From assembly GCF_036365525.1 (NCBI RefSeq), contig NC_090387.1, forward strand, positions 76,073,300 through 76,137,299: a stretch of DNA of 64,000 bases, in the 5' to 3' direction. The DNA comes from Heterodontus francisci. Its lineage: Eukaryota. The notes beneath the pieces were generated by a model. It saw nothing but the letters and a program-made list of their open reading frames with translations, did no database searches and was not told the origin of the DNA. This document shows positions 35,660 to 57,200 of the stretch, in pieces (position 1 is the stretch's first letter; each line of letters starts with the position of its first letter). The position numbers and the translations under genes were made by a program.

Positions 35660-35797
35660 TTAGCTTCTCTCTTTCTTTATGAAGTTTACTTCAGCATACA
35701 CTGCGCTCTTGTCTTGTTTAGGTTTTGATGTTTTCTTGGAATCAGCAAGCTGTAGAGTGGCGTAAGTCAGCTGGTTCTCACCGCTTCTTTGTTTAGT
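35660..35797 (-). CDS. IgSF receptor terminal exon with ITIM: TKQRSGENQLTYATLQLADSKKTSKPKQDKSAVYAEVNFIKKERS-stop
   Basis: Acceptor CTTTTACAG|ACT, phase 0; ITIM LTYATL plus distal ITIM-like AVYAEV; TAA at 35662-35660. Confidence 0.85.
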   Translation of the reverse strand, partial: TKQRSGENQLTYATLQLADSKKTSKPKQDKSAVYAEVNFIKKERS

Positions 35798-36045
35798 CTG
35801 TAAAAGTAATATTTCGTATCACCCGTTAATCTATTGCCCACTCATTGCTTGAGGTAATCGAGGTTTGAAAAAGGCTGTAGTGAAAATTCTTCTCATCAAT
35901 TACCAACTTCAGATTGTAACCGGATTTTGTTTTGGTTTATTTCTCTCCGGTTTCTCCCTTCTCTGCAAACGATTCATGTTTTGTTCCAATTCCAAACCCT
36001 CCCCTAAATCTTACTGGTATTCCGCTTTAACCTTCATATAAAATT

Positions 36046-36180
36046 AGTTCTGAAGAAAGGTCACAACCTGAAACGTTAACTCTGTTTCTCTCTCCATTGA
36101 TGCTGCCAGACCTGCTGAGTATTTCCAGCACTATCTGTTTTTCTTTCAGATTTCCAGCATCGGCAGTATTTTGCTTTTAT
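36046..36180 (+). mobile_element. Penelope-type short repeat with hammerhead motif (36046-36081)
   Basis: AGTT-CTGAAGA-A-AGGT(CACA)ACCT-GAAACGTT-AACT; flanked by the 15-bp direct repeat TATAAAATTAGTTCT. Confidence 0.8.
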
Positions 36181-36444
36181 AAAATTAGTTCTCCTGCTGA
36201 TGCAGCCCATTTAAGGGAGAAGATTGATACTTCAATTAAAATAGAAAAATGAATTTCATACTGGTCTGTTCATGGTATTTGGAATGACGGCCCTGTTGTT
36301 TGAGCCTCGACAGCCAATATGACCCTTACCCCATGGATGAGGCTCCAAGGTCACATTTTTCAGCCGCCTTTCCCCTGCTATCACAGAGTGATGATTTTGT
36401 GTAGAAATGGTTTGGATATCATTCGCGGCAATTTCTTGCCCTAC

Positions 36445-36555
36445 CTGGGGATAGACGGTGTGGTCTATCTCATGTCTACGTTTGGGGGGTCCTTTGTCGT
36501 CTCTCAAGTTTAGAGTAGCGTAGGCGGCAAATTGTTCACTTGGTCTTAGTATTTC
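36445..36555 (-). pseudogene. Orphan or decayed cytoplasmic exon: EILRPSEQFAAYATLNLRDDKGPPKRRHEIDHTVYPQ
   Basis: 111-nt open frame homologous to the terminal exon (YATL...VY), with donor CAG|GTAGGG, but preceded by TAA where an AG acceptor is expected. Confidence 0.55.
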
Positions 36556-37002
36556 TTATCTTATTTTTACAGGTTGTACAGATAGCTGAGAATCTGATAC
36601 AGCAGCCAGCTACCATCAATTGGAACTGAGTCTGAAAGTGTAATATGGAGAGAGTAACCGATAGAATTAGGGCTTAATTGCATTCTGTCCACTCACAATC
36701 ATTTTATTCAATATCTCACCTATAGGGTGAGGAATAGTTCCAAATAAGAAATCCGGAGCGCTCAAACCTTAATCCTCAGTCAGCCCAGCTTATTGGAAGA
36801 CCTTGCAGGCCTGAAATTGTCCTTGTTCCACTTCCAGCCACTTCCATCCCGAGCCGGAAATCAGCCGCTGAGACCCTAGCCATTCACCCCCTCCCCGCAA
36901 CTGCCTAACCCAGGGTTTCAGGGTTCAGACCAATTATCTACCGGTAGCACTGTCCCAGCTTACAGATCAGAGGCGGGGACGGCACCTGGGACCTTCCGAA
37001 TC

Positions 37003-37170
37003 TGAAAGCAAAATACTGGGGTTGCTAGATATCTGAAATATCAACAGAAAGTGCTGGAAATACTCTGCAGATCTGGCAGCATCTGTGGAGAGAGAAGCAG
37101 AGTTAACCTTTCAGGTCTGTGACCTCTCATGAAAGATCAGTGTCCTGAAACGTTGCCTCCGTTTCTCTCA
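37003..37170 (-). mobile_element. Penelope-type short repeat with an inverted partial copy
   Basis: Reverse complement of the 36046 repeat followed by a + strand CCTGAAACGTT...TTTCTCTC copy. Confidence 0.7.
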
Positions 37171-37320
37171 CCTTCCTAACCTGTCTGGTTGTGCTGCACA
37201 ATGTCTTAATTAAGCAACTGGGTATGTCCGATTTTTAAAATAATTTGAATTATGAAAGAGGAAGTTGTCAGAAGTATATGTTATGGTAAATACAAATATT
37301 TATCTTGGCCTTAAAATCAA

Positions 37321-37568
37321 GATGTACAGTTCAAAAACAAGGAATTTAGCAAAACCTTTCTAAATCACTGGTGAAGCCTCAGCTGGAGCACTGTGTTCAA
37401 TTCTGGGCACCACACTTTAGGAAAGATGTCAAGGCCTTCGAAAGCATGCAAAGGAAATTTACTGAAATGGTATCAGGAATGAGCGACTTCAATTATGTCG
37501 GGGAGACTATAGATTCTACGATTGTTCTCTCTAGAGCAGAGAACGTTAAGGGGAGATTTAATAGAGGT
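37321..37568 (+). mobile_element. Old CR1 3' fragment, part 1 (continues at 40721-40980 and 44219-44290)
   Basis: KPQLEHCVQFWAPHFRKD...; collinear continuation after the two nested insertions. Confidence 0.8.
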
Positions 37569-40500
37569 CACAGAGTCATAGTCATAGAGTTATACAGCAC
37601 AGAAACAGGCCCTTTGGCTCATCGTGTCTGCGCCGGCCATACAGCACCCAACTGTTCTAATCCCATATTCCTGCACTTGACCCGCAGCACTGTATGCTAT
37701 GGCGTTTCAAGTACTCATTTAAATACTTCTTAAATGTTGTGAGGATTCCTGCCTCCACCACCTCTTCAGGTAGTGCGTTCCAGATTCCAACCACCCTCTG
37801 GTGAAAAAATGTTTCCTCAAATCCCACCTAAACCTCCTGCCCCTTACCCAAAATCTATGCCCCCTGGTTATTGACCCCTCCACTAAGGGAAAACGTTTCT
37901 TCCTATCTAACCTATCAATACCCCTCATAATCTTGTACACCTCAATCATGTCCCCCCTCAGCCTTCTCTTCTCCAAGGAATATAACCCTAGCCTTTTCAG
38001 TCTCTCTTCATAGCCGAAATGCTCCAGCCCAGGCAACATCCTGGTGAATCTCCTTTGCACCCTCTCCAGTACAATCACAACCTTCCTATAGTGTGGTGAC
38101 CAGAACTGTACACAGTACTCCAGCTGTGGCCTAACTTGTATTTTATACGGCTCCATCATAACCTCCCTGCTCTTATATTCTATGCCTCGACTAATAAAGG
38201 CAAGTATCCCATATGCTTTCATAACCACCTTATCTACCTGTACTGCTGTCTTCAGTGATCTTTGGACAAGTACACCAAGGTCCTTCTGACTTTCTGTACT
38301 TCCTAGGGTCCTACCATCCATTGTGTATTCCCTTGCCTTGTTAGTCCTCCCAAAATGCATTACCTCACACATTTCAGGATTAAATTCCATTTGCCACTGC
38401 TCCGCCCATTTTACCAGCCCATCTATATCTCCCTGTAATCTAAGGATTTCCTCCTCACTATTTACAACATCACCAATTTTCGTGTCATCTGCGAACTTAC
38501 TGATCATACCTCCTATATTCACATCTAAATCATTAATGTACACTACCAACAGCAAGGGTCCCAGCACTGATCCCTGTGGTACACCACTGGTCATAGGCTT
38601 CCAATCGCAAAAACAGCCCTCAACCATTACCCTCTGCCTCCTGCCACTTAACCAATTTTGGATCCAATTTGCCAAATTGCCCCGGATCCCATGGGCTCTT
38701 ACCTTCTTAACCAATCTCCCATGTGGGACCTTATCAAAAGCCTTACTGAAATCCATGTATACTACATCAACTGCTTTACCCTCATCGACACATCTAGCCA
38801 CCTCATCAAAAAATTCAATCAAGTTAGTTAGACATGATCTCCCGCTATCAAAGCCATGCTGACCATCCCTGATTAATCCCTGCCTCTCCAAGTGGAGATT
38901 AATCCTGTCCCTCAGACTTTTTCCAATATTTTCCCAACCACTGATGTTAGTCTCACCGGCCTGTAATTACCTGGTTTATCCCTACTACCCTTCTTGAATA
39001 ATGGTACCACATTCACTGTCTTCCAGTCCTCTGGTATCTCTCCTGTGGCCAGAGAGGATTTGAAAATTTGTGTCAAAGCCCCTGTTATCTCCTCCCTTGC
39101 CTCACATAACAGCCTGGGATACATCTCATCTGGACCTGAGGATTTATCCACTTTTAAGCCCGCTAAAACAGCTAATATTTCCTCCCTTTCAATGCTAATA
39201 TGTTCAAGTATATCACAATCCCCCTCCCTGATCTCTACACCTACATTGTCCTTCTCCATAGTGAACACTGATGAAAAGTAATCATTTAAAACCTCACCTA
39301 TGTCCTCCAGCTCCACACAAAGATTGCCACTTTGGTCCCTAATGGGCGCTACTGTTTCCCTGGTTATCCTCTTACCCTTAATATACTTATAAAACGTCTT
39401 GGGATTTTCCTTTATCTTGCCCGCCAGTGTTTTTTCATGCCCCCTCTTCGCTCTCCTAATTACTTTTTCAAGTGCCACCCTACACTTTCTATACTCCTCG
39501 AATGCCTCCATTGTTTTCAGTGCTTGGGATCCGCCGTAAGTCTCCTTTTTTTTCCTGATCCAATTCTCTATATCCCTTGACATCCAGGGTTCCCTGGGCC
39601 TGTTAGTCCTACCCTTCACCTTAACGGATACATGTTGGCTCTGAACTCTCACTATTTTCTCTTTGAATGGCTCCCACTGATGTGATGTAGACTTTGCTAC
39701 AAGTCGCTGCTCCCAGTCTACTTTGGCCAGATGCTGTTTTATCATATTGAAATCAGCCTTCCCCCAATTCAGTACGTTTATTTCTGGTCCATCTTTGCCC
39801 TTTTCCATAACTAGCTTAAATCTTAAATGGTCACGATCCCCGAAATGCTCCCCCACTGACACTTCTACCACTTGACTGGCTTCATTCCCTAGGATTAGGT
39901 CCAGTACTGCCCCTTCTCTTGTAGGACTTTCTACGTACTGGCTCAAAAAGCTCTCCTGTATGCATTTTAAGAATTCTGCCCCTTTTAAGCCTTTTGCACT
40001 AAGACTATCCAGTTAATATTGGGGAAGTTGAAATCCCCTACTATTATTACCCTATTATTTTTACACCTCTCTGAGATTTGCCTACATATCTGCTCCTCTA
40101 TCTCTTCCTTACTATTTGGAGGTCTGTTGTAGACACCCAGCCAAGTGATTGCCCCCTTTTTGTTTTAAGTTCTACGCATATGGCCTCATTTGAGGAACCT
40201 TCTAAGACGTCATCCCTCCTTACTGCAGTAATTGACTCCTTGATCAACAGTGCAATGCCACCTCCTCTTTTATCCCCTCCCCTGTCGCGCCTGAAGATTC
40301 TATACCCTGGAATATTGAGCTGCTGGTCCTATCCCTCCCTCAACCATGTCTCTGTGATCGCAATAATATCATAATCCCATGTGCTAATCAATACCCTCAA
40401 TTCATCTGCCTTACTAGTAAGACTCCTTGCATTGAAATAGATGCAATCCAACCTTGCATTTTTCCCTTGTGCCTTACCAGGTCTATATTTGCTCTGCCTT

Positions 40501-40720
40501 CCAGGCAGACTCACTTTCAGTTCTATATTACCCACTACTGTACCTCAACTCTGTATCCCATCCCCCTGCCAAATCAGGGGACTCCTGTACTACCTACCTG
40601 CAACTATTACTCCGCCTGGTGGTCACCCATCACTTTTCTGCCTGTACTGCCATTACCTGCGATGTGACTACCTCTCTAAATGTGCTATCCATGAGGTCCT
40701 CAGCATCATGGATGCTCCAC
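37569..40720 (-). mobile_element. CR1 LINE (ORF2 in three to four pieces, internally deleted ORF1 remnant)
   Basis: 390-aa RT and 344-aa EN/linker frames; FNARSL and TETW endonuclease motifs. Confidence 0.95.
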
Positions 40721-40980
40721 AGGTGTTCAGAATTATGAAAGGTTTTGATAGAGTAAATCAGGAGAAGCTGTTTTCACTGGTGGTTGGGTCGGTATCCAGG
40801 GGACAGAGATTTAAAATAATTGTCAAATAATCAGGGAAGATGAGGATATTTTTAATGCAGCCTGCTGTTGTGATCTGGAATGCACTGCCTGAAAGGGTGG
40901 TGGAAGCAGATTCAGTAGAAACTTTCAAAAAGGATATATATACTTGAAATGAAAAAAATGTAGGGCTATTGGTAAATGTG

Positions 40981-43900
40981 GGGAGGCAGTGGCGTCGTGG
41001 TATTGTCGCTGGACTAGTAATCCAGAGACCCAGGGTATTGCTCTGGGGACATGGGTTCAAATCCCACCACAGCAGAAGGTGGAATTTGAATTCAATTAAT
41101 AAATCTGGAATTTAAAAAAAGCTAGTCTAATGATGGCCAAGAAACCATTGTTGATTGTTGTAAAAATCCATCTGGATCACTAATGTCCTTTAGGGAAGGA
41201 AATCTGCTGTCCTTACCTGGTCTGGCCTACATGTGACTCCAGACCCACAACAATGTGGTTGACTCTTACATGCCCTCAGAAATGGCCTAGCAAGCTACTC
41301 AGCTGTATCAAACCACTACGAAGTCAATAAAAAGGAATGAAACCAGATGGACCAACTGGCATCGACCTAGGCACTGGAAATGACAATGGCAAACCCAGCC
41401 TGGTCGACCCTGCAAAGTCCTCCTTATTAACATCTGGGGGCTTGTGCCAAAGCTGGGACAGCTGTCCCACAGACTAGTCAAGGAACAGCCTGACATAGTC
41501 ATACTCACGGAATCATACCTGACAGACAATGTCCCAGACTCTGCCATCACCATCCCCGGGTATGTCCTGTCCCACTGGCAGGACAGAACCCAGCAGAGGT
41601 GGCAGCACAGTGGTATACAGTCGGGAGGGAGTTGCCCTGGGAGTCCTCAACATCGACTCTGGACCCCATGAAGTCTCATGGCAGCAGGTCAAACATGAAC
41701 AAGGAAACCTCCTGCTGATTACCACCTACTGCCCTCCCTCAGCTGATGAGTCAGTACTCCTCCATGATAAACAACACTTGGAGGAAGCACTGAGGTTGGC
41801 AAGGGCACAGAATATACTCTGGGTGAGGAACGTCAATGTCCATCACCAAGAGAGGCTTGGTTGCACCACTACTGACCGAGCTGGCCGAGTCCTAGAGGAC
41901 ATATTTGCTAGAATGGGTAAGCAGCAGGTGGTGAGGGAACAACAAGAGGCGAAAACATACTTGACCTCTTCCTCATCAATCTGCCTGCCGCAGTTGCATC
42001 TGTCCATGACAGTATTGGTAGGAGTGACCACCGTACAGTCGTTGTGGAGCCAAAGTCCTGCCTTTACATTGAGAATACCCTCCTTCGTGTTGTGTGGCAC
42101 TACCACCGTGCTAAATGGGATAGATTTCAAACAGATCGAGCAATGCAAAACTGGGCACCCAGGAGGCGCTGTGGGCCATCAGCAGCAGCAGAATTGTACT
42201 CAACCACAATATGTAACCTCATGGCCCAGCATATCCCCCACTCTACCATTACCATCAAGCCAGAAGACCAATCCTGGTTCAATGAAGAGTGCAGGAGGGC
42301 AATGAGGTGTCAACCTGGTGAAGCTACAACACAGGACTATCTGCATGCCAAACTGCATAAGCAGCATGCAATAGACAGAGTTAAGCAATCCCATAACCAA
42401 CGGATCAGATCTAAGCTCTGCAGTCCTGCCACATCCAGCCATGAATGGTGGTGGACAATTAAACAACTAACTGGAGGAGATGGGGGAGCCCAGCACATCA
42501 GTGCAAAAGATAAGGCTGAAGCATTTGCAACAATCTTCAGCCAGAAGTGTCGAGTTGATGATCCATCTCGGCCTCCTCCTGAAGTCCCCAGCATCACAGA
42601 TGCCAGACTTCAGCCAATTCGATTCACACTGCGTGATATCAAGAAACAACTGAAGACACAGGATACTGCAAAGACTATGGGCCCTGACAATTTGCTGGCA
42701 ATAGTATTGAAGACCTGTGCTCCAGAACTTGCCACACCCCTAGCCAAGCTGTTTCAGTACAGCTACAACACTGGCATCTACCTTGCAATGTGGAAACTTA
42801 CCCAGGTATGTCCTGTACACAAAAAGCAGGACAAGTCCAACCCGGCCAATTACCGCCCCATCAGCCTACTCTCAATCATCAGTAAAGTGATGGAAGGTGT
42901 CATCAACAGTGCTATCAAGCAGCACTTGCTTAGCAATAACCTGCTCAGTGATGCTCAGTTTGGATTCCGCCAGGGCCACTCAGCTCCTGACCTCATTACA
43001 GCCTTGGTTCAAACATGCACAAAAGAGCTGAACTCAAGAGATGAGGGGAGAGTGAGTGCCCTTGACATCAAGGCAGCATTTGACAAAGTATGGCATCAAG
43101 GCACCCTAGCAAAACTGAGGTCAATGGGAATCAGGGGGAAAATCCTCTGCTGGCTGGAGTCATACCTAGTGCAAAGGAAGATGGTTGTGATTGTTGGAGG
43201 TCAATCATCTGAGCTCCAGGACATCACTGCAGGAGTTACTCAGGGTAGTGTCCTGGGCCCAACCATCTTCAGCTGCTTCATCAATGACCTTCCTTCAATC
43301 ATAAGGTCAGAAGTGGGGATGTTTGCTGACGATTGCACAATGTTCAGCACCATTTGTGACTCCTCAGATACTGAACCAGTCCGTCTATAAATGCAGCAAG
43401 ACTTGGATAATATCCAGGCTTGGGCTGATAAGTGGCAAGTAACATTCATGCCACACAATTGCCAGGCAAAGATCATCTCCAACAAGAGATTCTAACCATC
43501 TCCCCTTGACATTCAACGGCATTACCATCGCTGAATCCCCCACTATCAACATCCTAGGAGCTACCATTGACTAGAAACTGAACTGGAGTAGCCATATAAA
43601 TACCGTGGCTACAAGAGCAGGTCAGAGGCTAGGAATCCTGTGGCGCGTAACTCACCTCCTGACTCCCCAAAGCCTGTCCACCATCTACAAGGCACAAGTC
43701 AGGAGTGTGATGGAATACTCTCCACATGCTTGGATGGGTGCAGCTCCAACAACACTCAAGAAGCTCGACACCATCCAGGACAAAGCAGCCCGCTTGATTG
43801 GCACCACATCTACAAACATTCACTCCCTCCACCACCGATGCACTGTGACAGCAGTGTGTACCATCTACAAGATGCACTGCAGCAATGCACCAATGCTCCT

Positions 43901-44218
43901 TAGACAGCACCTTCCAAACCCGCGACCTCTACCAACTAGAAGGACAAGGGCAGCAAATGCATGGGAACAGCAGCACCCGCAAGTTCCCCTCCAAGTCACA
44001 CACCAACCTGATTTGGAACTATATCGCCGTTACTTCACTGTTGCTGGGTCAAAATCCTGGAACTCCCTCCCAAACAGCACTGTGGGTGTACCTACCCCAC
44101 ATGGACTGCAGCGGTTCAAGAAGGCAGCTCACCACCACCTTCTCAAGGGTAATTAGGGATGATCAACAAATTCTGGCCTGGCCAGCGACGCCCACATCCC
44201 ATGAATGAATAAAAAAAA
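40981..44218 (+). mobile_element. Full-length tRNA-headed single-ORF (APE-RT) LINE, CR1/L2 group, disrupted copy
   Basis: A box 40990-41000, B box 41054-41064; ORF about 41380-44156 with NIWGL, ILTES, YCPPS, SDH, NYRPISL, QGSVLGP, FADD; A-rich tail. Confidence 0.92.
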
Positions 44219-44399
44219 GTCGGCGAGTGGGCCTAATTAGATAGTAATTTCAAAGGGCCAGCACAGACACCATGGGCTTCGTTCTTGCTGTAGGGTTCTA
44301 TGAATCTATGAAATTTACTTAATATCTTGTGGACAGAATGTAAAATTTCTTGCTTTTCCCCCGCCTCTTTTTGGAACATGAAGAACATTGTCACCCTAC

Positions 44400-44443
44400 C
44401 AGCTCTTTCGCCTGACCCGCTTCCTCAGAATTTTTCTTACTGC
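44400..44443 (-). CDS. IgSF receptor short cytoplasmic exon: GSKKNSEEAGQAKEL
   Basis: Strong acceptor TCTTCTCTTTCCCTCAG|GC, donor CTG|GTAGGG; 44 nt converts phase 1 to phase 0 as required. Confidence 0.75.
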
Positions 44444-44680
44444 CTGAGGGAAAGAGAAGACAACATTGAATAGCTTAATCAGTGTATAAGCAAAACATCA
44501 TGCTTTCAATGCTAAACACAGGTACTGTGTAAAGTAAGGAGACTTGAAAGTGCAGATCTCTCTGAAGATGTTAAGCAGTACCAGCCATGACAGCGCAGAA
44601 TGCTGTGCATTACCTTCTCATACCCCGCAGTGGCGCTGCACCCAATGGAGTAGACCTTGCATTTATGCAATCGTGTCAAA

Positions 44681-45004
44681 CAGGGTTGTCCAACCTTTTC
44701 ACGCGGGTGGGTGCACAATAGCCGGTTCTGACTTTTTTATAAAGCGCGCTGGAAAACCCCGAATCTGTCATAAGTTCGGAACCGCTGTTTCCCCCTCCCA
44801 GTACCTGTCAGCTGTGAAACTGACTTGCAATTTTTTAAAAAGTCGGTCTGGAAAAATAAGCCAATGAGAAATTTCTCTGAAATTACCGGTCGCAGATTCC
44901 TTGCGAGGATGAGGAACAGCCCGATGCAGTTTACATCCGTGGGTCGGATGGAAACCTTTGGCTGGCCGGATCCTGGCCCGCGGACGGTATGTTGGATAAC
45001 CCTG
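44681..45004. mobile_element. hAT (Charlie-like) MITE
   Basis: TIRs CAGGGTTGTCCAAC / GTTGGATAACCCTG (13/14 match); 8-bp TSD GTGTCAAA / GTGTAAAA (7/8). Confidence 0.85.
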
Positions 45005-45537
45005 GTGTAAAACATGTAATAGAGAGTCGGCAACCCATTTTACATCTCAGAATTACGATACAAATAAAATCTGGACGAGATGCAAAATAGGTTGTCCTTA
45101 CCAATTCGATATCACCCATTTTACATTATCGCAGAAAGTCAAAATCTACTTCAAAGCGTTTACACTTCAAGATCTGGACCAGCACGGATAGTAAAAAAAT
45201 GCAAAACATTTAAGGATTCCGGGTATTGCAAAATAGAAATGAAAAAGTCGAATGAATAGTTCGAATGGGAAAGTGAAATATTTGCATTTCAAAATCCGGT
45301 ATACATGGTCATATTCAACTACCCAGCACATAAAGCTGCTATTGCTATTTATTCTTCCCGTTTGCGCATGTGCGCAGGTTGGCGCAGTCGGATGACGTCA
45401 CCGGCCGGCGGCGTTGTCAAGAATCACTGTTATTCTTCGACAACGAAGGACGAAGGGCACCTGCCCTTTCTGTATTGTAACAATACAACTGGGCCTTAGA
45501 AAATAAAAGTATTCGGTGGAATAAGAAATATTCTTAC

Positions 45538-45642
45538 CATCTGATGCCTTTAATTTGAGTCTGGTCAAAATTATTATTAATAATAAAATTGCCAGTATGC
45601 CCCCTGCACATCCAAAAATCAGCGGAAATTTGTTACCAATAT
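45538..45642 (-). CDS. IgSF receptor transmembrane exon: DIGNKFPLIFGCAGGILAILLLIIILTRLKLKASD
   Basis: Acceptor CCTGCAG|AT, donor GAT G|GTAAGA, phase 1-1; hydrophobic helix with no charged residue, followed by basic stop-transfer residues. Confidence 0.85.
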
Positions 45643-45785
45643 CTGCAGGATCAACAGATAACTGAAATAAGAAACTGTAGAGCACAGCACTTATACAGCG
45701 CGTTTAACATAGTAAAACGTCAAAAGGCATTTCACAGAGAATCACCAAACAAAATTTTAAACCAAGCCACATAAGGGGATATTAG

Positions 45786-45876
45786 AAATAAAAACAAGAA
45801 ATGCTGGAAATACTCAGCAGGTCTGGCATCATCTGTGGAGAGAGAAGCAGAGTAAACGTTTCAGGTCAGTGACCTG
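45786..45876 (-). mobile_element. Truncated Penelope-type short repeat nested in an L2 fragment
   Basis: Reverse complement of the 51128 repeat; 13-bp direct repeat AAGGGGATATTAG at 45773-45785 and 45877-45889. Confidence 0.8.
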
Positions 45877-46382
45877 AAGGGGATATTAGGACAGCTGGAG
45901 ATAGAGTTCAAGGAGCGTCTTAAACGAGAGAGAAATAGAGAGCCGGAGAGATCGGGAATTTTAAAGTTTAGCGTGTAGACAACTGAAGGCAGGGTTTGCA
46001 GAGAACAGATGAACATAATGATATTTCCAAATATTCAATTTAAATTCACGGGATGTAAAGTGACTCTGGTAGAATCGATCCATTTTATCTGTAGTTTCAT
46101 TTTATTTGGCAAGAATTTGACAAGGAATAATCTTTCAAGTTCTGAGCAGCTCGCACATCAACCTCGCGTTTCAGATCTCTTCACAAAGAGACTCTTCTTC
46201 CTTCACCTACAAACCATCTTGAATATTTTATTTCGTTCCCATTTATCTGGCATTGAGAGTAAATACAGTCCACATTCACTCCATACCCTCGAGTTTGAAC
46301 AGTGTTCCAGCTGCATGTCTAATAAGTGAATACAGATTGAAGTAATTACCACGTTCCCCGCTGTATATATTTGCAAACGTAC

Positions 46383-46679
46383 CTCGATTGGCGGTGTAGC
46401 TGACACTGGCAGGTACCAGAAGAGAGACATGAGATGCCAGACAGGTGTAAACAACTTCATTCGGGGCAGGTTGTACTTCTTCCAAAAAACTGGAAACCTC
46501 ATAAAGTCCCTCCGTGCTCTTGTTTTTCACAGTTTCTATTCCGCTCAGAATTTCGACACCATCTCTTAACCAGGAGATTTCTAAATGCTCCGGGTAAAAG
46601 GCAGCAGTTTTACACTCGAGTTTCAGAGATTCTGTTGAAATTCCTTCAACAGCAGCGATTTTCAGGGGGGTCGGGGGAA
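46383..46679 (-). CDS. IgSF receptor C1-set domain exon
   Basis: Acceptor T-tract...ATTAAAG|TT, donor CGA G|GTACGT, phase 1-1; C1 motifs LECKTAAFYPEHLEISWLRDG, GLYEVSS and YTCLASHVSL. Confidence 0.92.
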
Positions 46680-47154
46680 CTTTAATGGAGAGAAAAAAAA
46701 AAGATTTTTTAAATTTAAAGGAACACATTCCCAGTTTTCTACTCTTATGCTGTTACAGCCCTACGGTTACAACAGTTATCGTTGCTGTCGTTTTTTAAAC
46801 TTTATGTTTGCATTTATCTTATAAATCGTTGTACAGCGCACAGCAAATTGACGAACTGTATTACAAACGATGCACAAAGAGGAGGAATCTCCAAGGGCTG
46901 GTTACATTCAGGGAAGCAGACGCCACTGCTCTGAATGGAAGTATCAGATCCTGGCCCGGGATTGGGGTTTACAGTAATGATCCCAAGTGAGATTCCTGTC
47001 CCACTATATTGGAGTGAGCGTAAACCAGTTCACACGAACAGCGGAATCGACTCTCGTTATTCCGTAAGAATCATTGCCGTACTGAACATTTTGTTTGTTT
47101 ATTTCAAAATTGGTCGTTTTCGAATATTCCACATATTTCAAAACATATTTTCTT

Positions 47155-48228
47155 TTATTGGCAAGATGGATACAGAACTGGCTCGGTCATAGAAGACAGA
47201 GGGTATCAGTGGATGGGTGTTTTTCTGAATGGATGGATGTGACTAGTGGTGTTCCGCAGGGATCAGTGCTGGGACCTTTGCTGTTTGTAGTAAATATAAA
47301 TGATTTGGAGGAAAATGTAGCTGGGCTGATTAGTAAGTTTGTGGATGACACCAAGGTTGGTGGAGTTGCGGATAATGATGAGGATTGTCAGAGGATACAG
47401 CAGGATATAGATCGGTTGGAGACTTGGGCGGAGAAATGGCAGATGGAGTTTAATCCGGACAAATGTGGGGTAATGCATTTTGGAAGGTCTAATGCAGGTG
47501 GGAGGTATACAGTAAATGGCAGAACCCTTAGGATTATTGACAGGTGGAGAGATCTGGGCATACAGGTCCACAGGTCACTGAAAGTGGCAACGCAGGTGGA
47601 TCAGGTAGTCAAGAAGGCATACGGCATGCTTGCCTTCATCGGTCGGGGCATAGAGTATAAAAATTGGCAAGTCATGTTGCAGCTGTACAGAACCTTAGTT
47701 AGGCCACACTTAGAATATTGCGTGCAATTCTGGTCGCCACACTACCAGAAGGACGTGGAGGCTTTGGAGAGGGTACAGAGGAGGTTTACCAGGATGTTGC
47801 CTGGTCTGGAGGGCATTAGCTATGAGGAGAGGTTGGAAAAACTCGGATTTTTTTCACTGGAACGACGGAGGTGGAGGGGCGACATGACAGAGGTTTACCA
47901 AGTTATGAGCGGCATGGACAGAGTGGATAGTCAGAAGCTTTTTCCCAGGGTGGAAGAGTCAGTTACTGGGGAACATAGGTTTGAGGTGCGAGGGGCAAAG
48001 TTTAGAAGGGATGTGCGAGGCAGGTTTTTTACACAGAGGGTTGTGAGTGCCTGGAACATGCTGCCAGGGGAGGTGGTGGAAGCAGATACGATAGCGACGT
48101 TTAAGAGAAATCTTGGCAAATACATGAATAGGAAGGGAATAGAGGGATATGGGCCCCGGAAGTGCAGAAGGTGTTAGTTTAGGCAGGCATCAAGATCAAG
48201 AATGGCCTGTACTGTTCTTTGTTCTTTG
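47155..48228 (+). mobile_element. 5'-truncated young CR1 LINE (uninterrupted ORF2 C-terminal third)
   Basis: Open frame to 48177 with QGSVLGP and FVDD; (TTCTTTG)n tail. Confidence 0.95.
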
Positions 48229-49983
48229 GTTAATATTGAAAAGATGATGTGTGTAATCAAAATATCTCTGATGTCGATATTGAATCCAGACAGGATGTTT
48301 TTATATGTATAGATTAGAATCCGTGCATTACAACATTTCAACGTCTATGGTGGAGATTTCAGATCGTGCAGCTTTCACCTAAGGAACTTTCTCCAGAGGG
48401 GGAACCGAGGGCTGAAACGTTTTTCACCTTATGAAAGGGTTATATTGGTAATTATATATCAATGTGTAGATCCATACAGAAGAGGGAAACTGAATGGGAA
48501 ATCCTAACTCCGAGTGCATGTTTTATATAATTCCAGGGGTTGCGCCCTTCCCCAAGTTCATTCGGCCTGTTTAACACGTTTTGCCTGGATTCTGCTTATA
48601 TCAGTCCTACATTTACCATTTACTAATACGAACCTGTGTCCGCTCGATCTACAGTCACTGTTTAGCTGGAAAGACAGGCCGTTTATTAGGTTTGCATTGT
48701 TTTGCCAATTTATTACCATCTCCTTAACATTTTTTCTTTCCACATTTACTTTTCCGACGTTGTAGTAATAGAAAATGATTAAATTAGGGACATTATTAAC
48801 TTGCAAAATTATATTAGCCTTTATTTCAAACAAAGGCTCAGAATTCCTCTATTCTTTTACCATGGATTTGCTTTAGAGATAATATGCAATGCAGTAGAAT
48901 TTCAGTGGAGGAAGCCGGTGCTTTTTTGATCTCCCGCCGTAATTTCGTGTGGGGTTTGGGGAGTGTAAATAGAAATCATGAATGACAAATACGGAGCCCA
49001 GGCGTTTATACAAATGCTCGGTGATATCCTTCCAGTATTTGACGGGTTGAGAGTATGTAAAAAAAGTCCACTTGGCGTACGACAGAGGTTCAAACACGGG
49101 CATTGGGTAGCTTCACTGTTCAGCAAGCTGGAGGACTTGGGCTGGAATCCAGTATTGAGGGCAAGATCAACACCTCCCTTCTCACTGAATTGGAGGATTC
49201 ATTTGTGAAAAGAGTTTGGTAGCTCAAGCAAGTCATCAGTGGACACAGGTGCACAGCATAAATTGCGGACATAGGAACAGAGAGAACATGCAGCCCCTCG
49301 AGCTTGCTGTGCCATTCATTTATATTATGGTTGATTTGCACATTAACTCCATTTTCCCAAATTAATTCATTTCTCTTGATACGCACACCTAACAAAAACT
49401 ATCCACCTCAAATATCGGACAATTTGGTATAGAAAGTATTAAATAGGCAATTTTGAGCAGTGGACAGTTATCTGGTGCGAGAAATATTCAGGGCGGTAGT
49501 AGGAAAGTGTTCATCTGAGCTTGTAACGAGTCACCTTGTTGGGGTAGGTTATTTGGTCTTTTATGTTGTATAAAAGACTGGACCTAAGAGGTGTTAAAAT
49601 TGTTCCCATTGTTGCACTTTGGCACCGTTATTTTGGTGAGAAGGAACCTTATCCTATCGATTAATTTCAAACTAAGGTTTAAATATTTGTTTTCACTCTC
49701 TTGGCTTAATAACAATTGTAACTACACCAAAAGCACTCATTGGGTGAAAAACACTTTGGAATGCTCTGAGGACAACGAGAGGGTGAAATTGGTCTTTACG
49801 CAGTAGCGCAAAACTGGCGATAGCGAATCGGCGGTCGTTGTACTCCGGGGTCAGTGGAAAAGAAAATCCCGAGATGAGTAAAACGAATTTGTTATCAGCA
49901 AGTTTTCTTCCAGTGATAAAAGTGAAATTCCATATATTGCACACAGCTGAAAAAGTCCCACTCCCTGGTACAATGACACTTAC

Positions 49984-50319
49984 CGTACACAGTAAGCTGG
50001 GAACCACTTCCATTTGCAATAGATTCTTGATGTTTTACTTTACAGTAATACACTCCAGAGTCGGCAACACTCGCATTCAGAACATCAAATGAACTACTTC
50101 CTTTTTTTACATTAAATCGCTTTCTGCTGTCTGGTTCCAGAAACGATCCCTCGCCGCGTTTCCACCAATAAACATCGGGAGTATCTTGAAATAGCGGAAA
50201 TGTACAGCGCATGGAAACACTCGCACCTCTGACAACCTTCAAGAATTTAGGGAACTGATCCACTTTGTTCGAAGTTACTTCAGCGGTAACAGTTGCATAC
50301 ATCAGATAAAGAAAAATAA
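49984..50319 (-). CDS. IgSF receptor V-domain exon (VJ-type V-set, includes the rest of the signal peptide)
   Basis: Acceptor TTTCTCTTAG|TT, donor TAC G|GTAAGT, phase 1-1; motifs VSMRC, VYWWK, DSGVYYC and J-like NGSGSQLTV. Confidence 0.92.
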
Positions 50320-50719
50320 CTAAGAGAAATAAAACACAAAAACCATTAAAAACACCAATAAGCGAATTGGAGAAACACAATATCTAATTTTGCAATACAT
50401 AACAATTGTAGACACTTCTAAAATATGATTGAAGCTATTCTGAAACGGCAGCATATGCCAACTAAAGGTACCTGGCCAAACCATGCCCAAAAGAGCCATG
50501 TACTGAACTGAAGCTGTCACCGACATGTTGCAAGTAAAACATTAGATAGCCACTTGGTGTAAATGAGAATCGTAACCTGGATGGTTTGGGCAAGAAATGG
50601 ATTTGATAGATAAATATATTAAGCATGTGACCATGACATGAGGTATCACATGACTACGACGGCGTATTGAGTCCGGTTACATATACTTCTGCGTGGGAGT
50701 CTGTGAAGTAGGAGGTCAC

Positions 50720-50741
50720 CTGCTGGCTGAAAAGTTTTCAT
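50720..50741 (-). CDS. IgSF receptor, candidate leader exon (MKTFQPA + G)
   Basis: ATG preceded by an in-frame TAA; donor CAG|GTGACC, phase 1; joins the V exon to give signal peptide MKTFQPAVIFLYLMYATVTA. An alternative candidate lies at 59166-59178. Confidence 0.6.
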
Positions 50742-51127
50742 CGAATGCTTTTACAGACGCTCCCGGCCCTTCGATCCGACAATCTTCCAACACCCGTCTT
50801 TAACCCTCTTCTCAATACTGAAAATGATGATTCAGGCCGCAGGCGCGGGTAGTCCTCCAACATCTCATCTCAGGGAACCTTCTTCATGCAGGAGCATGGA
50901 CAGTGAGAGTGGGCAAATATTTAGTCCTGGGCGCACAGTCTAGTGCGATCGTGATCTCTCCCAGCCTCCATGCACCTGGACGTCTAGCAGAAGTCACTGG
51001 AATGGCAATTAGGATTAATTAATCTGCTCATCTCTCTTCCTCTACTTCAGAATTGGTGATGCCTATTTCAACATCATCCAAGACAGAGATGAAATTCTGG
51101 ACCTGTACCCACATGGTTCAATGATAC

Positions 51128-54289: not shown

Positions 54290-57200
54290 TTTGTTTTCAC
54301 TGGAGTGCTGACTTGGGTTGCACTAGAGTGTTAAAGTGGAAGTTTGGTGACTGAGGATAAATAAGGGTTAATTTTATCTTAAGTCTAGTCTGTCTTTTAT
54401 TTAGCAGATTAACTTAACAGTTGCTGTTTGGGTTGGAGAAGGTGAGTTTTAGACCAGCTTTAAACAGAGTTCACTCAGGCACTGCTTGCAGCTGCACCTT
54501 GTTAATTAGAGAATTGGCTTAAACCAGTTTTCAGGGGCTAGAGTCAGTCAGTATAAAAATGGGCCATCTTACAGTGCTGACCTTGTTTGTACTGGAGTGC
54601 TGACTTAGGTTGCATTACAGTGTTAAAGTGGAAGTTTGGTGACTGAGGAAGTTCGGTGAGGAGGGAGCGAGGAGCTCCTTTCATTTCCTACCTGTCCCCA
54701 GAGTGACGGGAGCTGAGAGTCTCCAAAGAGCACAGCTGACTGGTGAGTAAGTCCTGGTGGGTATTTTTCAAAGTGGATTGAATTGCAAGTCATTATTTTA
54801 GCAAGACTTAGTTGTTTTTTAAAAATTATAATCTTCTAAAGTTTTAAATTTAAAGGGTTTAGTCATGGCAGGAGAGCTTGCAGCCGTGGTTTGCTCCTCT
54901 TGCTGCATGTGCGAAACCGGGAACATTTCCAGTCCCTGGGACCAGCATGTGTGCAGGAAGTGTGTCCAGCTGCAGCTCCTGGAAGCTCGGGTTTCAGAGC
55001 TGGAATGGTGGCTGGAAACACTGTGGAGCATCCGCGAGTCTGAGAGCATTGTGGATAGCACGTATAGAGAGGTGGTCACACCACAGCTGAAGGGACTTGA
55101 GGAAGGAAGGGAATGGGTGACCACCAGGCAGTCCAAGAGAATCAGGAAGGTAGTTCAGGAGTCCCCTGGAGTCCCACTTGCAAATCAGTATTCTATTTTG
55201 GAGGCTGATGAGGCTGGTTCCTCCAGGGAGAGTGGACAGAGCCAAGCTTCTGGCACCACAAGCAGCCTGTCTGCACAGGAAGGGGGAAAGAGAGGAAGAG
55301 CAATAGTAATAGGGGATTCTATAGTCAGGGGAACAGATAGGTGCTACTGTGGCCGTCAACGTGACTCCAGGATGGAGTGTTGCCTCCCTGGTGCCAGGGT
55401 CAGGGATGTCACTGAACGGCTGCAGGGCATCCTGAAAGGGGAGGGTGACAAGGCAGAGGTCATGGTACATGTTGGTACCAATGACATAGGCAGAAAGAGG
55501 GATGAGGTCTTGCATCAAGAATTCAGGGAGTTAGGCAGTAGACTAAAAAGCAGGACCTCTCGGGTTGTAATCTCTGGATTACTTCCAATGCCACGTGCTA
55601 GCGAGTATAGAAATAGGAGAATAGCACAGATGAACGCGTGGCTTAAGAGTTGGTGCAGGAGGGAGGGTTTTAGATTCCGGGACCACTGGGACCGTTTCTG
55701 GGGAAGGTGGGACCTGTACAAGCAGGACGGTCTACATCTGCACCAGACGGGGACTAACATCCTTGCTGGCGGGTTTGCTAGTGCTGTTCGGAGGAGTTTA
55801 AACAAATTTGGCAGGGGGAGGAGATGCAGACTCCTAGCAGAATAGGAACACAGCTAAACACAGGAAAGCGAACAGGTCAGAGGGAATACAGCGGAAGTAA
55901 GTTTCAAGGGAGTAAAACCAGGATGGAAGGCCTCTGCTTGAATGCCAGGAGTATTGCAGGTAAAACGGATGGGTTAAGGGCAATGATTGACACGTGGAAT
56001 TGTGATATAGTAGCCATCACGGTGACATGGTTGAGGGAGGGGCAGGATTGGCAGTTCAATATCCCGGGATATAGAATCTTCAGGCGAGACAGAGGAGGGG
56101 GTATTGCAATATTAGTTAAGCAGTCAGTTACTGCAGTGAGGAGAGATGATATCTTGGAGGGGGCATCAAATGCAGCTTTATGGGTAGAGTTTGGGAATAA
56201 AAAAGGGGCAGCCACATTGCTAGGTGTTTATTATAGACCCCCAGATAGTCAGCGGGAAATTGAGGAGCAAATATGTGCGCAATTTGCAGAGGTGTGTAAA
56301 AATAATAGGGTAATTATATTAGGTGATTTCAACTTTCCCAACATTAATTGGGATAGTCATCGTGTTAAGGGCTTAGATGGAGTGGAGCTTTTTAAATGCA
56401 TACAGGAGAACTTTTTAGCTCAATATGTAGAGGATCCAACAAGGGAGGGTGCAGTGCTGGACCTAATTCTGGGAAATGAAGCCGGACAGGTGGTTGATGT
56501 GTTGGTGGGGGAGCATTTTGGTGATAGTGACTACAACATGGTACAATTTAAGCTTGTTATGGAGAAAGAAATAGACAAGTTGTAAAAAAAGGTTTTGGAT
56601 TGGGAGACAGTGAATTTTAGTAAAATAAGGCAGGATCTGGCCAAGGTAGACTGGAAAGAGTTATTTGTCGGGAAATCTACAGAAGAGCAGTTGGGGGAGG
56701 GGGGGGGGGGGGGGGTGGGGTGGTGGTGGCGTGGGTGGCATTCAAAAAGGAAATGGGGAGGGTACAGGCCCAACATGTTCCCTCTAGGGTAATAGTTGGA
56801 GCAACAAGCCCAGAGAACCATGGATGACCAGAAACATTCAGGGTACGATGAGAAGGAAAAGAGAGGCTTTTAGCAAATACAAGGAGAGCAAATCAATGGA
56901 AGCATTAGTGGAGTACAGAAAGTGTAGGATGGAGATTAAGAAAGCACTTAGGAGAGCAAAGAGGGAATATGAGAAAACTCTGGCTGGTAAAAGTAGGGAA
57001 AATCCCAAGATATTCTAAAAGTATATCAGTGGGAAGAAGATAACCAGGGAAAGAGTAGGACCCATTAGAGACCAAGGGGGAAATGTGTGGCTGGAGCCAG
57101 AGGACATTGGTAGGGTGTTGAACGAATACTTCACATCTGTCTTCACCCAAGGGAAAGAGGATGTAGATATGGAACTTAGAGAGAGAGACTGTGAGGTTCT

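What the first reader, a model, noticed from the sequence alone, without database searches (positions are those of the whole stretch)
35660..50741. Non-rearranging VJ-C1 inhibitory receptor with antigen-receptor-chain architecture
Seen: six phase-compatible exons give a protein of about 313 aa: signal peptide, V domain with the J-like diglycine motif (YYCKVKHQESIANGSGSQLTV) in the same exon, a single C1-set domain, an uncharged TM containing Cys and GxxxG (GCAGG), and a tail with LTYATL and AVYAEV. I saw no CACAGTG heptamer at the V/J boundary. Established: VJ plus C1 is the Ig light chain/TCR layout; outside rearranging receptors and MHC, C1 domains occur in few families (SIRP, tapasin, B7/nectin-like); mammalian SIRP-alpha is V-C1-C1 with ITIMs; germline VJ-C1 genes are discussed as relics of the pre-RAG receptor. 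Inference: this is a cartilaginous-fish two-domain SIRP-like or VJC1-type SHP-1/2-recruiting receptor, informative about the origin of antigen receptors. The ORF track shows it only as scattered fragments.
Basis: partly seen in the sequence, partly recalled or inferred. Interest (0 to 1): 0.78.

Follow-up and report, generated by a model that had tools for sequence, protein, structure and literature searches.

The report
Horn shark SIRP-like V-C1 inhibitory receptor
This is a real, spliced horn-shark gene for a cell-surface "brake" receptor built like a single antibody or T-cell-receptor chain that never rearranges; it is one more copy of a large shark, ray and chimaera gene family that databases list under misleading automatic names.

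Summary
The gene is real. Six minus-strand exons, all GT..AG (leader 50526-50472, V with built-in J 50319-49984, C1 46679-46383, TM 45642-45538, short tail exon 44443-44400, last exon 35797-35660), translate exactly to RefSeq XP_067905823.1. This is a 324-aa Heterodontus francisci protein auto-named [quoted passage not shown], that is SIRP-alpha-like. Public transcript contigs join leader-V, V-C1 and C1-TM at exactly these borders. The two tail junctions rest on the RefSeq model and homology only.

The V-set and C1-set domains, the J-like motif inside the V exon, the absent heptamer, the uncharged GCAGG membrane span, and LTYATL and AVYAEV are all confirmed.

It belongs to a multigene family. 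All 43 profile hits and all 19 named look-ups are chondrichthyan. Some relatives carry ITIM tails; others have short tails and an arginine in the membrane span. Function (SHP-type phosphatase recruitment) is inferred. It is SIRP-like in design but not a proven SIRP: it has one C1 domain, not two, and Ig light chains score equally well.

The scan found this family before on other DNA of this genome. I found no paper describing it.

The parts
50472..50526 (-). Leader exon. ATG at 50526, donor CCAG|GTACCT, phase 1.
   Evidence: A transcript contig in run X1 joins 50319 to 50472. With the other five exons it translates exactly to RefSeq protein P0162. Sequence.
49984..50319 (-). V exon with the J-like motif in the same exon (…YYCKVKHQESIANGSGSQLTVY). 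Its first 11 codons extend the signal peptide.
   Evidence: Pfam V-set E 1.2e-11. Joints 50319->50472 and 46679->49984. No CACAGTG nearby..
46383..46679 (-). C1-set constant-domain exon. It starts with the family signature VPPTPLKI.
   Evidence: Pfam C1-set E 1.6e-8. Exact-match transcript contigs lie at 46442-46540 and 46576-46680. Joints at 46679->49984 and 45642->46383. C1 hallmarks counted.
45538..45642 (-). Stalk, transmembrane and juxtamembrane exon: an uncharged span with GCAGG, then the stop-transfer residues RLKLK.
   Evidence: Joint 45642->46383 in run X1.
44400..44443 (-). Short cytoplasmic exon of 44 nt (SKKNSEEAGQAKEL). It moves the reading phase from 1 to 0.
   Evidence: tblastn of paralogue P0011 residues 210-225. 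Splice sites. Part of the exact match to P0162. No read evidence was obtained for its two junctions.
35660..35797 (-). Last coding exon, with ITIM LTYATL (35770..35753), a second tyrosine motif AVYAEV (35704..35687) and stop TAA 35662-35660.
   Evidence: It is 95.7% identical to the paralogue's last exon. It is also the last exon of RefSeq isoform X1, P0204.
36394..36558 (-). Decayed tail module (…FAAYATLNLRDDKGPPKRRHEIDHTVYPQ…), homologous to an exon that paralogues still use. It is not part of the product.
   Evidence: 68% identity to P0011 229-278. There is an in-frame TAA at 36558-36556. The three AGs downstream of it give phases 1, 2 and 2, none the phase 0 needed after exon 5 (my reading). 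Absent from P0162.
50646..50741 (-). It is not used as coding leader.
   Evidence: No joint from it was seen. Run depth is 0 in bins 50552-50900. The observed joint ends at 50472. The region resembles the 5' end of paralogue P0164's model.
37719..39946 (-). LINE reverse-transcriptase ORFs inside the long last intron.
   Evidence: ORFs of 390 and 344 aa whose translations read as reverse transcriptase. These two were not scanned against Pfam.
41529..44156 (+). A second LINE in the same intron, on the opposite strand.
Evidence: ORFs of 258, 448 and 183 aa.
47095..48177 (+). LINE reverse-transcriptase fragment in the V-C1 intron.
   Evidence: ORF of 360 aa. Very high repeat depth in the RNA contigs.

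Best explanation
A functional, expressed, germline-joined (non-rearranging) immune-receptor gene of the horn shark.

The product is a 324-aa type I membrane protein. It has one V domain that ends in a built-in J-like strand, one C1-set domain, an uncharged membrane span and a 69-residue tail. The tail holds a canonical ITIM (LTYATL) and, 22 residues later, a second tyrosine (AVYAEV).

Proposed mechanism (inferred):
- The V domain binds a cell-surface or pathogen ligand.
- Src-family kinases phosphorylate the two tyrosines.
- The pair docks the tandem SH2 domains of SHP-1/SHP-2-type phosphatases.
- These damp activating signals in the same cell.

The gene is the inhibitory type in a chondrichthyan-wide multigene family. 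Other members have short tails and an arginine in the membrane span, which is the activating type. The family therefore works like SIRP, KIR or NITR paired receptors.

Shown: gene structure, splicing of the first four exons, domain types, family membership, conservation of the ITIM. Inferred: ligand binding, phosphorylation, phosphatase recruitment, cell type.
For: - Six GT..AG exons translate exactly to RefSeq XP_067905823.1.
- Transcript contigs of run X1 join 50319->50472, 46679->49984 and 45642->46383. Intron bins outside repeats have depth 0 in all three runs.
- Pfam V-set and C1-set both score above their curated cut-offs.
- There is no heptamer at the V end.
- AlphaFold2 model of the 88-92% identical paralogue P0151: two Ig domains at pLDDT above 90, a TM helix at 222-251 and a disordered tail.
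- Family: 31 hits to the paralogue and 43 profile hits, all chondrichthyan.
- Of 48 family rows, 42 have a TM, 23 have at least one [SIVL]xYxx[ILV] in the tail and 14 have the [LV][TS]YAx[LV] form. Most relatives with tails of 35 residues or fewer have an arginine at the start of the span.
- The tyrosines are 22 residues apart. From my own knowledge, this is in the range seen in PD-1 and SIRP-alpha tyrosine pairs.
Against: - The second motif has Ala at position -2. It is therefore neither a canonical ITIM nor an ITSM. Chimaera relatives have TEYAEI there.
- This copy lacks the tail modules, with their four further tyrosines, that its close paralogues keep. Here they survive only as a decayed pseudo-exon.
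- The ancestral V-exon acceptor is lost. An upstream AG adds 11 hydrophobic residues to the leader.
- The junctions TM->exon 5 and exon 5->last exon were not seen in reads.
- The runs are only guessed to be RNA by their record, and all three come from one sample.
- There are no binding, phosphorylation or expression-by-tissue data.
Confidence: 0.72

Rival explanations
1. It is a true orthologue or co-orthologue of tetrapod SIRP-alpha that lost (or never gained) the third domain. It would serve a CD47-type 'don't-eat-me' axis on myeloid cells.
For: - RefSeq's pipeline names it, and many relatives, SIRP-alpha-like.
- The family profile matches the SIRP-alpha ectodomain 2wng_A at 102.8 bits over V plus the first C1, and SIRP-gamma at 88.6 bits.
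- Close paralogues have four or more tail tyrosines, like SIRP-alpha (recalled).
- The family includes relatives with a basic residue in the membrane span, like SIRP-beta.
Against: - There is one C1 exon, not two.
- Fab light chains score about 86-88 bits in a single stretch. SIRP is therefore no closer than antigen-receptor chains.
- With single exons, SIRP is not among the best 60 PDB hits.
- The copies are lineage-specific expansions.
- The tail-only search found nothing outside the query.
- Synteny could not be examined.
Confidence: 0.12
2. It is a weakened or decaying copy. The loss of the tail modules, the non-canonical second motif and the shifted leader acceptor leave a receptor that signals poorly, acts as a decoy, or is on its way to becoming a pseudogene.
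For: - There is a relic module with an in-frame stop and no usable acceptor.
- AVYAEV stands where other members have an ITSM-like motif.
- The leader is 11 residues longer than in the three close paralogues.
- An earlier scan note reports another copy whose inhibitory exon is read out of frame (not checked by me).
Against: - The open reading frame is intact over 975 nt, with canonical splice sites.
- Exact-match transcript contigs exist.
- The canonical ITIM is kept.
- AVYAEV is also present in the full-tailed paralogues P0151 and P0163, so it is not a defect of this copy alone.
Confidence: 0.1
3. It is a B7-H6/B7-type ligand or adhesion molecule (V plus a C1-like domain) rather than a receptor of the antigen-receptor or SIRP type.
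For: - The best rigid two-domain structural match of the paralogue model is B7-H6: 4zso_E, Z 17.1, rmsd 3.4 A, 188 residues aligned, 23% identity.
- RefSeq names several relatives 'natural cytotoxicity triggering receptor 3 ligand 1-like'.
Against: - The next rows (Rst, PD-L2, butyrophilins) lie within about 1-1.5 Z units, so the ranking reflects the extended domain arrangement in the model.
- Foldseek puts Fab light chains and a TCR beta chain first.
- The J-like GxGxGSxLxV motif, the true C1 hallmarks, the ITIM tail and the relatives with arginine in the membrane span all fit a paired receptor.
Confidence: 0.04

Closest known systems
SIRP family (SIRP-alpha, -beta, -gamma) of tetrapods
   Same: - An N-terminal V domain with a J-like strand, followed by a true C1-set domain.
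- An ITIM-type tyrosine tail in inhibitory members.
- Short-tailed relatives with a basic residue in the membrane span.
- The family profile hits 2wng_A at 102.8 bits.
- C1 hallmarks as defined for SIRP-alpha in PMC2785349 (passages read).
   Different: - One C1 domain instead of two.
- This copy has two tail tyrosines rather than four.
- It is no closer in sequence to SIRP than to Ig light chains.
- The family expanded within cartilaginous fish.
- CD47 binding and synteny are untested.
Ig light chains and TCR chains (rearranging antigen receptors)
   Same: - The V-J-C1 layout, with phase-1 introns at the leader/V and V/C1 borders.
- Foldseek's best matches are Fab light chains and a TCR beta chain.
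- The best single-domain sequence matches of the V exon are shark V-NAR and TCR alpha V.
- The best match of the C1 exon includes a lambda constant domain.
   Different: V and J are one germline exon with no recombination heptamer. The tail carries an ITIM. There is no sign of rearrangement.
UrIg / UrIg2 (non-rearranging shark antibody-like genes; PMC12227049, abstract and passages read)
   Same: Non-rearranging VJ plus C1 genes kept in elasmobranchs. UrIg2 (9dmx_A) is among the top PDB sequence hits of the C1 exon and of the family profile.
   Different: UrIg2 is V-C1-C2-C3 and forms disulphide-linked dimers like an antibody. This gene has one C1, a membrane span and an inhibitory tail. The UrIg paper does not mention SIRP or ITIM (0 occurrences of each).
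PRARP genes of chicken and other non-mammalian vertebrates (Fu et al. 2019, J Immunol; not held, so recalled only)
   Same: As I recall, these are non-rearranging IgSF genes with a VJ-type V domain, discussed as remnants of the antigen-receptor precursor. PMC10751288 and PMC11599192 cite them among VJ-domain genes (passages read).
   Different: I could not read the paper or fetch any PRARP sequence, so the relationship is untested.
NITRs of bony fish (recalled)
   Same: A multigene family of germline V-with-J receptors, in inhibitory (ITIM) and activating (charged membrane span) forms.
   Different: As I recall, NITRs have no C1-set domain. Not tested here.
B7-H6 (NCR3LG1)
   Same: A two-domain V plus C1-like ectodomain. 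It is the top VIA-align match, Z 17.1, and the source of the automatic names of some relatives.
   Different: The match is tied with many other V-C pairs. B7-H6 is a ligand, not a paired receptor. See the third rival explanation.

Membership tests
IgSF C1-set domain | Pfam C1-set match above the curated cut-off | tested here: met
   PF07654, E 1.6e-8, 35.2 bits against a cut-off of 21.
IgSF C1-set domain | (F/Y)(F/Y/H)P at the BC loop; 13 residues between the strand-B Cys and the strand-C Trp; xVxH after the strand-F Cys (criteria from PMC2785349) | tested here: met
   FYP is present and there are exactly 13 residues. The strand-F motif reads C-L-A-S-H, with Ala for Val. The His is invariant in 30 of 30 aligned relatives.
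Non-rearranging (germline-joined) VJ gene | V framework and J-like GxG...L.V strand in one exon, with no recombination signal heptamer at the V end | tested here: met
   One exon, 50319..49984, holds YYC through GSGSQLTV and then the donor. The nearest CACAGTG sites are at 44078 and 51658. Nonamers and degenerate heptamers were not searched.
SIRP family | V-C1-C1 ectodomain (three domains) | tested here: not met
   There is only one C1 exon between V and TM. tblastn with four family proteins finds no second C1 in the window. The product equals the 324-aa P0162.
SIRP family | Sequence nearer to SIRP than to other V-C1 proteins | tested here: inconclusive
   Family profile against the PDB: SIRP-alpha 102.8 bits in two stretches, SIRP-gamma 88.6, Fab light chains 86-88 in one stretch. 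No tree with SIRP could be built because no SIRP sequence was available to the tools.
SIRP family | Cytoplasmic ITIM-type tyrosines that recruit SHP-1/SHP-2 | tested here: inconclusive
   The motif LTYATL is present and conserved in the family. Binding cannot be tested. The tail-only homology search returned only the query.
SIRP family | Orthology by synteny with the SIRPA region; CD47 binding | not testable with these tools
Paired activating/inhibitory receptor family | Closely related ectodomains on ITIM tails, and on short tails with a charged residue in the membrane span | tested here: met
   Of 48 family rows, 23 have an ITIM in the tail. Most relatives with tails of 35 residues or fewer (P0021, P0050, P0071, P0097, P0165, P0166, P0167) have Arg at the start of the span; P0099 (41-residue tail) has it too. 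The nearest V to the window's, P0164, ends like those short-tailed forms. Adaptor binding is untested.
Rearranging Ig/TCR loci | Separate V and J segments flanked by recombination signals | tested here: not met
UrIg family | V followed by several C domains (V-C1-C2-C3), antibody-like dimer | tested here: not met
   This gene has a single C1, a TM and an ITIM tail. The UrIg2 architecture is taken from PMC12227049.
PRARP | Sequence relationship to chicken PRARP genes | not testable with these tools
   The paper is not held and no PRARP sequence is at hand.

The most novel reading that the evidence does not exclude
The chondrichthyan V(J)-C1 paired-receptor family to which this gene belongs may be the closest living representative of the two-domain, non-rearranging, ITIM/adaptor-coupled receptor from which both SIRPs and the rearranging antigen-receptor chains descend. 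That would make it an older and simpler form than SIRP's V-C1-C1. [quoted passage not shown]
Probability: 0.13. Interest if true: 0.85.

Novelty: new variant of a known kind. Interest (0 to 1): 0.48.

Why it matters
C1-set domains are almost confined to antigen receptors, MHC molecules and a few associated proteins. Germline VJ-C1 genes are therefore the material from which models of the pre-RAG receptor are built.

A large family found so far only in cartilaginous fish, with V(J)-C1 ectodomains on inhibitory or activating-type anchors, would add a third non-rearranging lineage beside NKp30 and UrIg. It would also give sharks a SIRP/KIR-like paired receptor system that has not been studied.

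This particular copy adds detail rather than a new principle. It shows tail-module loss, a shifted leader acceptor and a read-through RefSeq model that fuses two tandem genes. These are useful for anyone curating the family, whose automatic names are inconsistent: SIRP-alpha-like, B7-H6-like, tapasin-related, lambda light chain-like, TCR beta-like.

Tried and rejected
Rejected. The observed joint runs from 50319 to 50472. Depth is 0 over 50552-50900.

Tail module 36555-36445 as a coding exon. Rejected. There is an in-frame TAA at 36558-36556. The three AGs downstream of it give phases 1, 2 and 2, while exon 5 ends in phase 0. The module is absent from the RefSeq product. An in-frame join straight from the TM exon, skipping exon 5, is formally possible but would use an acceptor with no pyrimidine tract.

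Tail-only homology search (P0106 residues 261-368, E up to 10). Only the query itself among 37 candidates. It says nothing about SIRP.

Profile search of 5.8 billion proteins. All 43 hits are chondrichthyan, but only the 8000 candidates sharing most words were scored. Absence from bony vertebrates is therefore not shown.

Structure searches. Foldseek gave Fab light chains and a TCR beta chain. VIA-align wide gave B7-H6, Rst, PD-L2 and butyrophilins, all nearly tied. Neither discriminates between candidate families.

V hypervariability among four close paralogues. 24 of 99 V positions and 25 of 99 C1 positions vary, so V shows no excess.

Literature. Nine searches (plus, which failed) found no paper on this family.
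- The PRARP search returned unrelated uses of the acronym.
- Fu et al. 2019 is not held.
- Most subscription journals are outside the library.
- Supplements are closed and I did not ask for them. Gene lists in the supplements of PMC12227049, PMC10751288 or PMC11599192 could mention such genes.

I therefore could not compare the paralogues' genomic loci, their coding DNA or synteny.

Full report
**What is there**

The gene lies on the minus strand. The ORF list and the sequence show four pieces:
- A V-type exon that ends …YYCKVKHQESIANGSGSQLTVY, followed by the donor G|GTAAGT.
- A C1-type exon that opens VPPTPLKI.
- An exon with an uncharged hydrophobic span holding GCAGG.
- A last exon with LTYATL and AVYAEV before a TAA.

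Scanned exon by exon, the V exon matches Pfam V-set (E 1.2e-11, 45.2 bits, cut-off 26). The C1 exon matches C1-set (E 1.6e-8, 35.2 bits, cut-off 21). The membrane exon and the tail exon match nothing meaningful.

The C1 exon has the three hallmarks that Hatherley et al. use for C1-set domains (PMC2785349, passages read). These are FYP at the BC loop, exactly 13 residues between the strand-B Cys and the strand-C Trp, and C-x-A-x-H after the strand-F Cys.

No CACAGTG lies anywhere between 44,084 and 51,658. The window has 15, against 10.3 expected. V and J are therefore one germline exon without a heptamer. I did not search nonamers or degenerate heptamers.

**Exon model**

The TM exon ends in phase 1 and the last exon begins in phase 0, so a fifth exon is needed.

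A full HMMER scan of 1.84 billion representative proteins with the V exon alone gave 819 hits at E ≤ 0.001. Many are giant multi-Ig proteins. The single-stretch hits of about 220-420 aa form a family. The best of them, P0011, is 92% identical over 76 residues.

tblastn of P0011 on the window found the missing exon at 44444..44397. Its splice sites are tctctttccctcag|GC… and …GAGCTG|GTAGGG.

A search with the full-length paralogue P0151 then returned P0162. P0162 is RefSeq XP_067905823.1, 'tyrosine-protein phosphatase non-receptor type substrate 1-like isoform X3 [Heterodontus francisci]', on a 99,651,266-bp record.

A script compared the six window exons with P0162:
- leader 50526..50472
- V 50319..49984
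- C1 46679..46383
- TM 45642..45538
- exon 5 44443..44400
- last 35797..35660

They total 975 nt, every intron is GT..AG, and the translation is identical to P0162.

I ran no search or fold with the joined product of my own model. Family-level work used the paralogue.

**Transcription**

The run search with the V exon listed three runs of one sample and one study, recorded as 'RNA? (a guess)'.

I laid them on 45400-50900 (5,501 letters). Their contigs cover the exons. Depth is zero in the non-repeat intron bins, for example 45952-46319 and 48712-49815 in all three runs.

Run X1 shows three joints, each in one contig and each CT..AC on the plus strand, which is GT..AG on the minus strand:
- 45642->46383, depth 9.9, side 44
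- 46679->49984, depth 34.3, side 24
- 50319->50472, depth 14.8, side 30

These are exactly the predicted exon ends, so the material behaves as RNA. Two C1-exon contigs match the window without any difference (46442-46540 and 46576-46680).

Other contigs carry 1-6 differences. Two of the differences would change residues to what the close paralogues have: V to M at the YYC motif, and G to E in RGEG. I read these as paralogues or the other allele.

A fourth joint, 50286->50472 in run X3, has non-canonical ends on the window (TA..AC). It corresponds to the acceptor position the paralogues use (…VWP|AAEV…). I take it for a paralogue's contig laid on the window.

In this gene that acceptor is gone. 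An AG 33 nt upstream is used instead, which adds 11 hydrophobic residues to the leader.

Depth is 0 from 50552 to 50900, and the joint ends at 50472.

They rest on the RefSeq model, on phase and on homology.

**The family**

Names and species were looked up for 20 representatives found with the V exon. Nineteen are named RefSeq or UniProt entries of cartilaginous fish. One is an unnamed ENA fragment.

The species seen across searches are Heterodontus francisci, Scyliorhinus canicula, Carcharodon carcharias, Chiloscyllium punctatum and plagiosum, Heptranchias perlo, Mustelus asterias, Mobula hypostoma and birostris, Narcine bancroftii, Hemitrygon akajei, Hypanus sabinus, Pristis pectinata, Cetorhinus maximus, Rhincodon typus, Hemiscyllium ocellatum, Scyliorhinus torazame and the chimaera Callorhinchus milii.

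The automatic names are inconsistent: SIRP-alpha-like, SIRP-beta or -gamma-like, B7-H6-like, tapasin-related, lambda light chain-like, TCR beta chain-like, uncharacterized.

The search with P0151 gave 31 proteins at E ≤ 1e-10. A profile of 30 family members (A1, without P0162) gave 43 at E ≤ 1e-8. All are chondrichthyan. Because only the 8000 word-sharing candidates were scored, this does not show absence elsewhere.

The alignment shows a family signature: G-x-G-[ST]-G-[ST]-x-L-x-V, then [VAT]PPTPL[KE]I. Invariant residues are the Cys and Trp of the V domain, D-x-x-x-Y-x-C, and the Trp, Cys and His of the C1 domain.

Quick maximum-likelihood trees (SH-aLRT support only) were built from 51 V rows and 48 C1 rows. 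Isoforms and duplicates were left out, as listed in the scripts.
- In the V tree the window's protein sits with three other horn-shark copies (support 89). They lie inside a shark-and-ray clade of 19 rows (support 94).
- In the C1 tree it sits with the horn-shark copies (support 92), inside a clade of 20 rows (support 97).

The copy is therefore a recent, lineage-specific duplicate, not a one-to-one orthologue of a characterised gene.

**Tail and pairing**

Of 48 family rows:
- 42 have a membrane span.
- 23 have at least one [SIVL]xYxx[ILV] in the tail. A few of these are juxtamembrane chance matches in short-tailed forms.
- 14 have the [LV][TS]YAx[LV] form seen here.

Most relatives with tails of 35 residues or fewer have an arginine at the start of the span, and several end it with an acidic residue followed by His (…IVDH, …IVEH). 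This is the pattern of adaptor-coupled activating partners.

The V domain nearest to the window's belongs to P0164. It is 93% identical by tblastn and is sister in the V tree (support 93). P0164 has no span in its model, but it ends like those short-tailed forms. I read P0164 as the likely activating-type twin.

In the window's product the two tyrosines are 22 residues apart. By my own knowledge, this suits tandem-SH2 phosphatases.

The second motif is AVYAEV, where chimaera members have TEYAEI. It is shared with the full-tailed paralogues P0151 and P0163.

The close paralogues carry tail modules, with four further tyrosines, between exon 5 and the last exon. In the window these survive at 36543..36394 with 68% identity. 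Three things exclude them from the product:
- An in-frame TAA precedes them at 36558-36556.
- No phase-0 acceptor is available.
- The far half has drifted.

This is the 'orphan tyrosine module' of scan note s1-872149. I confirm its homology and conclude that it is a dead exon.

**What it resembles**

With single exons against the PDB:
- The V exon's best single-domain matches are a shark V-NAR (E 3.8e-6) and TCR alpha V domains.
- The C1 exon's best matches are a lambda constant domain (within 2rcj_C), shark UrIg2, IgM and MHC class I alpha-3.

With the family profile:
- UrIg2 scores 123.8 bits over three C domains.
- SIRP-alpha (2wng_A) scores 102.8 bits in two stretches, the better one covering V plus the first C1.
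- SIRP-gamma scores 88.6 bits.
- Fab light chains score 86-88 bits in one stretch.

SIRP is therefore about as close as light chains, no closer.

The AlphaFold2 model of P0151 with A1 has both Ig domains above pLDDT 90, a helix at 222-251 and a disordered tail.
- Foldseek ranks Fab light chains and a TCR beta chain first (E about 1e-15, 19-24% identity).
- VIA-align over 48,161 representatives ranks B7-H6 first (Z 17.1, rmsd 3.4 Å, 188 residues aligned). Many other V-C pairs follow within 1-1.5 Z units.
- For the C1 domain alone it ranks MHC class II membrane-proximal domains and Ig CL (Z 15-15.7, rmsd 1.4-2.0 Å). For the V domain alone it ranks a skate NAR V domain and CD79b.

Structure confirms V plus C1 but does not pick a family.

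Against the SIRP definition, the three-domain architecture is not met. I therefore call the gene SIRP-like in design and do not file it as a SIRP.

**Literature**

- The UrIg2 paper (PMC12227049; abstract and passages read) treats UrIg and UrIg2 as the most promising non-rearranging relatives of antigen receptors. It names NCR3 as the other MHC-linked VJ gene. It contains neither 'SIRP' nor 'ITIM'.
- PMC10751288 and PMC11599192 (passages read) list NKp30, PRARP, SIRP, CD79, NITR and CD8 among VJ-type genes. Neither describes a shark V-C1 ITIM family.
- The other searches found nothing on it.
- Fu et al. 2019 on PRARP is not held, so the possible kinship with PRARP is recalled and untested.
- Supplements were closed.

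**Earlier notes of this scan**

Eight follow-up notes describe the same family elsewhere in this genome, with the same reading: a SIRP-like V-C1 family with inhibitory and activating forms, present in RefSeq under automatic names, with no paper found.

I reached the RefSeq identity, the family range, the paired forms and the blank literature through my own calls. These repeat the earlier readings on new DNA. They are not independent biological evidence.

**Verdict**

A real, expressed, intact gene and an ordinary member of an under-described family. Gene structure and domain types are settled. The inhibitory mechanism is a well-founded inference. Its place relative to SIRP, PRARP and antigen receptors remains open.

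Noticed in passing
window 35660-35797 and beyond the window's high end (>64000): RefSeq accessions XP_067905821 (P0204, isoform X1), XP_067905822 (P0163, X2) and XP_067905823 (P0162, X3) are consecutive, so they are isoforms of one RefSeq gene. P0204's last 46 residues are 100% the window's last exon. Its other parts are only 39-89% like the window, so they lie outside it. RefSeq therefore fuses two tandem family genes through a read-through model.
   Followed up: partly
proteins P0163/P0204 against the window's V exon 49984-50319 and C1 exon 46383-46679: The neighbouring gene's V domain belongs to another subfamily: it groups with Heptranchias P0112 (SH-aLRT 99). Its C1, TM and tail belong to the window's subfamily (C1 89% identical). 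This points to exon shuffling or gene conversion between family members.
   Followed up: partly
window 50286-50320: The V-exon acceptor used by the paralogues (…VWP|AAEV…) reads TA instead of AG here. An AG 33 nt upstream is used instead, which lengthens the signal peptide by 11 hydrophobic residues. A contig with the paralogue-type joint was laid on the window in run X3.
   Followed up: partly
window 45768-45951 and 47056-48343: Intronic repeats with summed RNA-contig depth of 10^4 to 2x10^5 in all three runs. They have many loose ends at 45784-45852, as expected of abundant SINE or LINE transcripts. A sequence like the first repeat recurs near 36050-36130.
   Followed up: no
window 17334-20769 and 54865-58728: Two LINE copies with a GDSL-esterase-type ORF1. 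The second also has an endonuclease and a reverse transcriptase (Pfam RVT_1 E 2e-36 and 7e-32; Lipase_GDSL_2; Exo_endo_phos). Outside the receptor gene no ORF of 130 aa or more matched anything but LINE domains, and four family proteins found no further family exon in the window.
   Followed up: partly
window 50750-50881: The region upstream of the leader is homologous (41% over 44 residues, with a stop) to the N-terminal extension in paralogue P0164's RefSeq model. That extension is therefore probably 5' UTR mis-called as coding.
   Followed up: no
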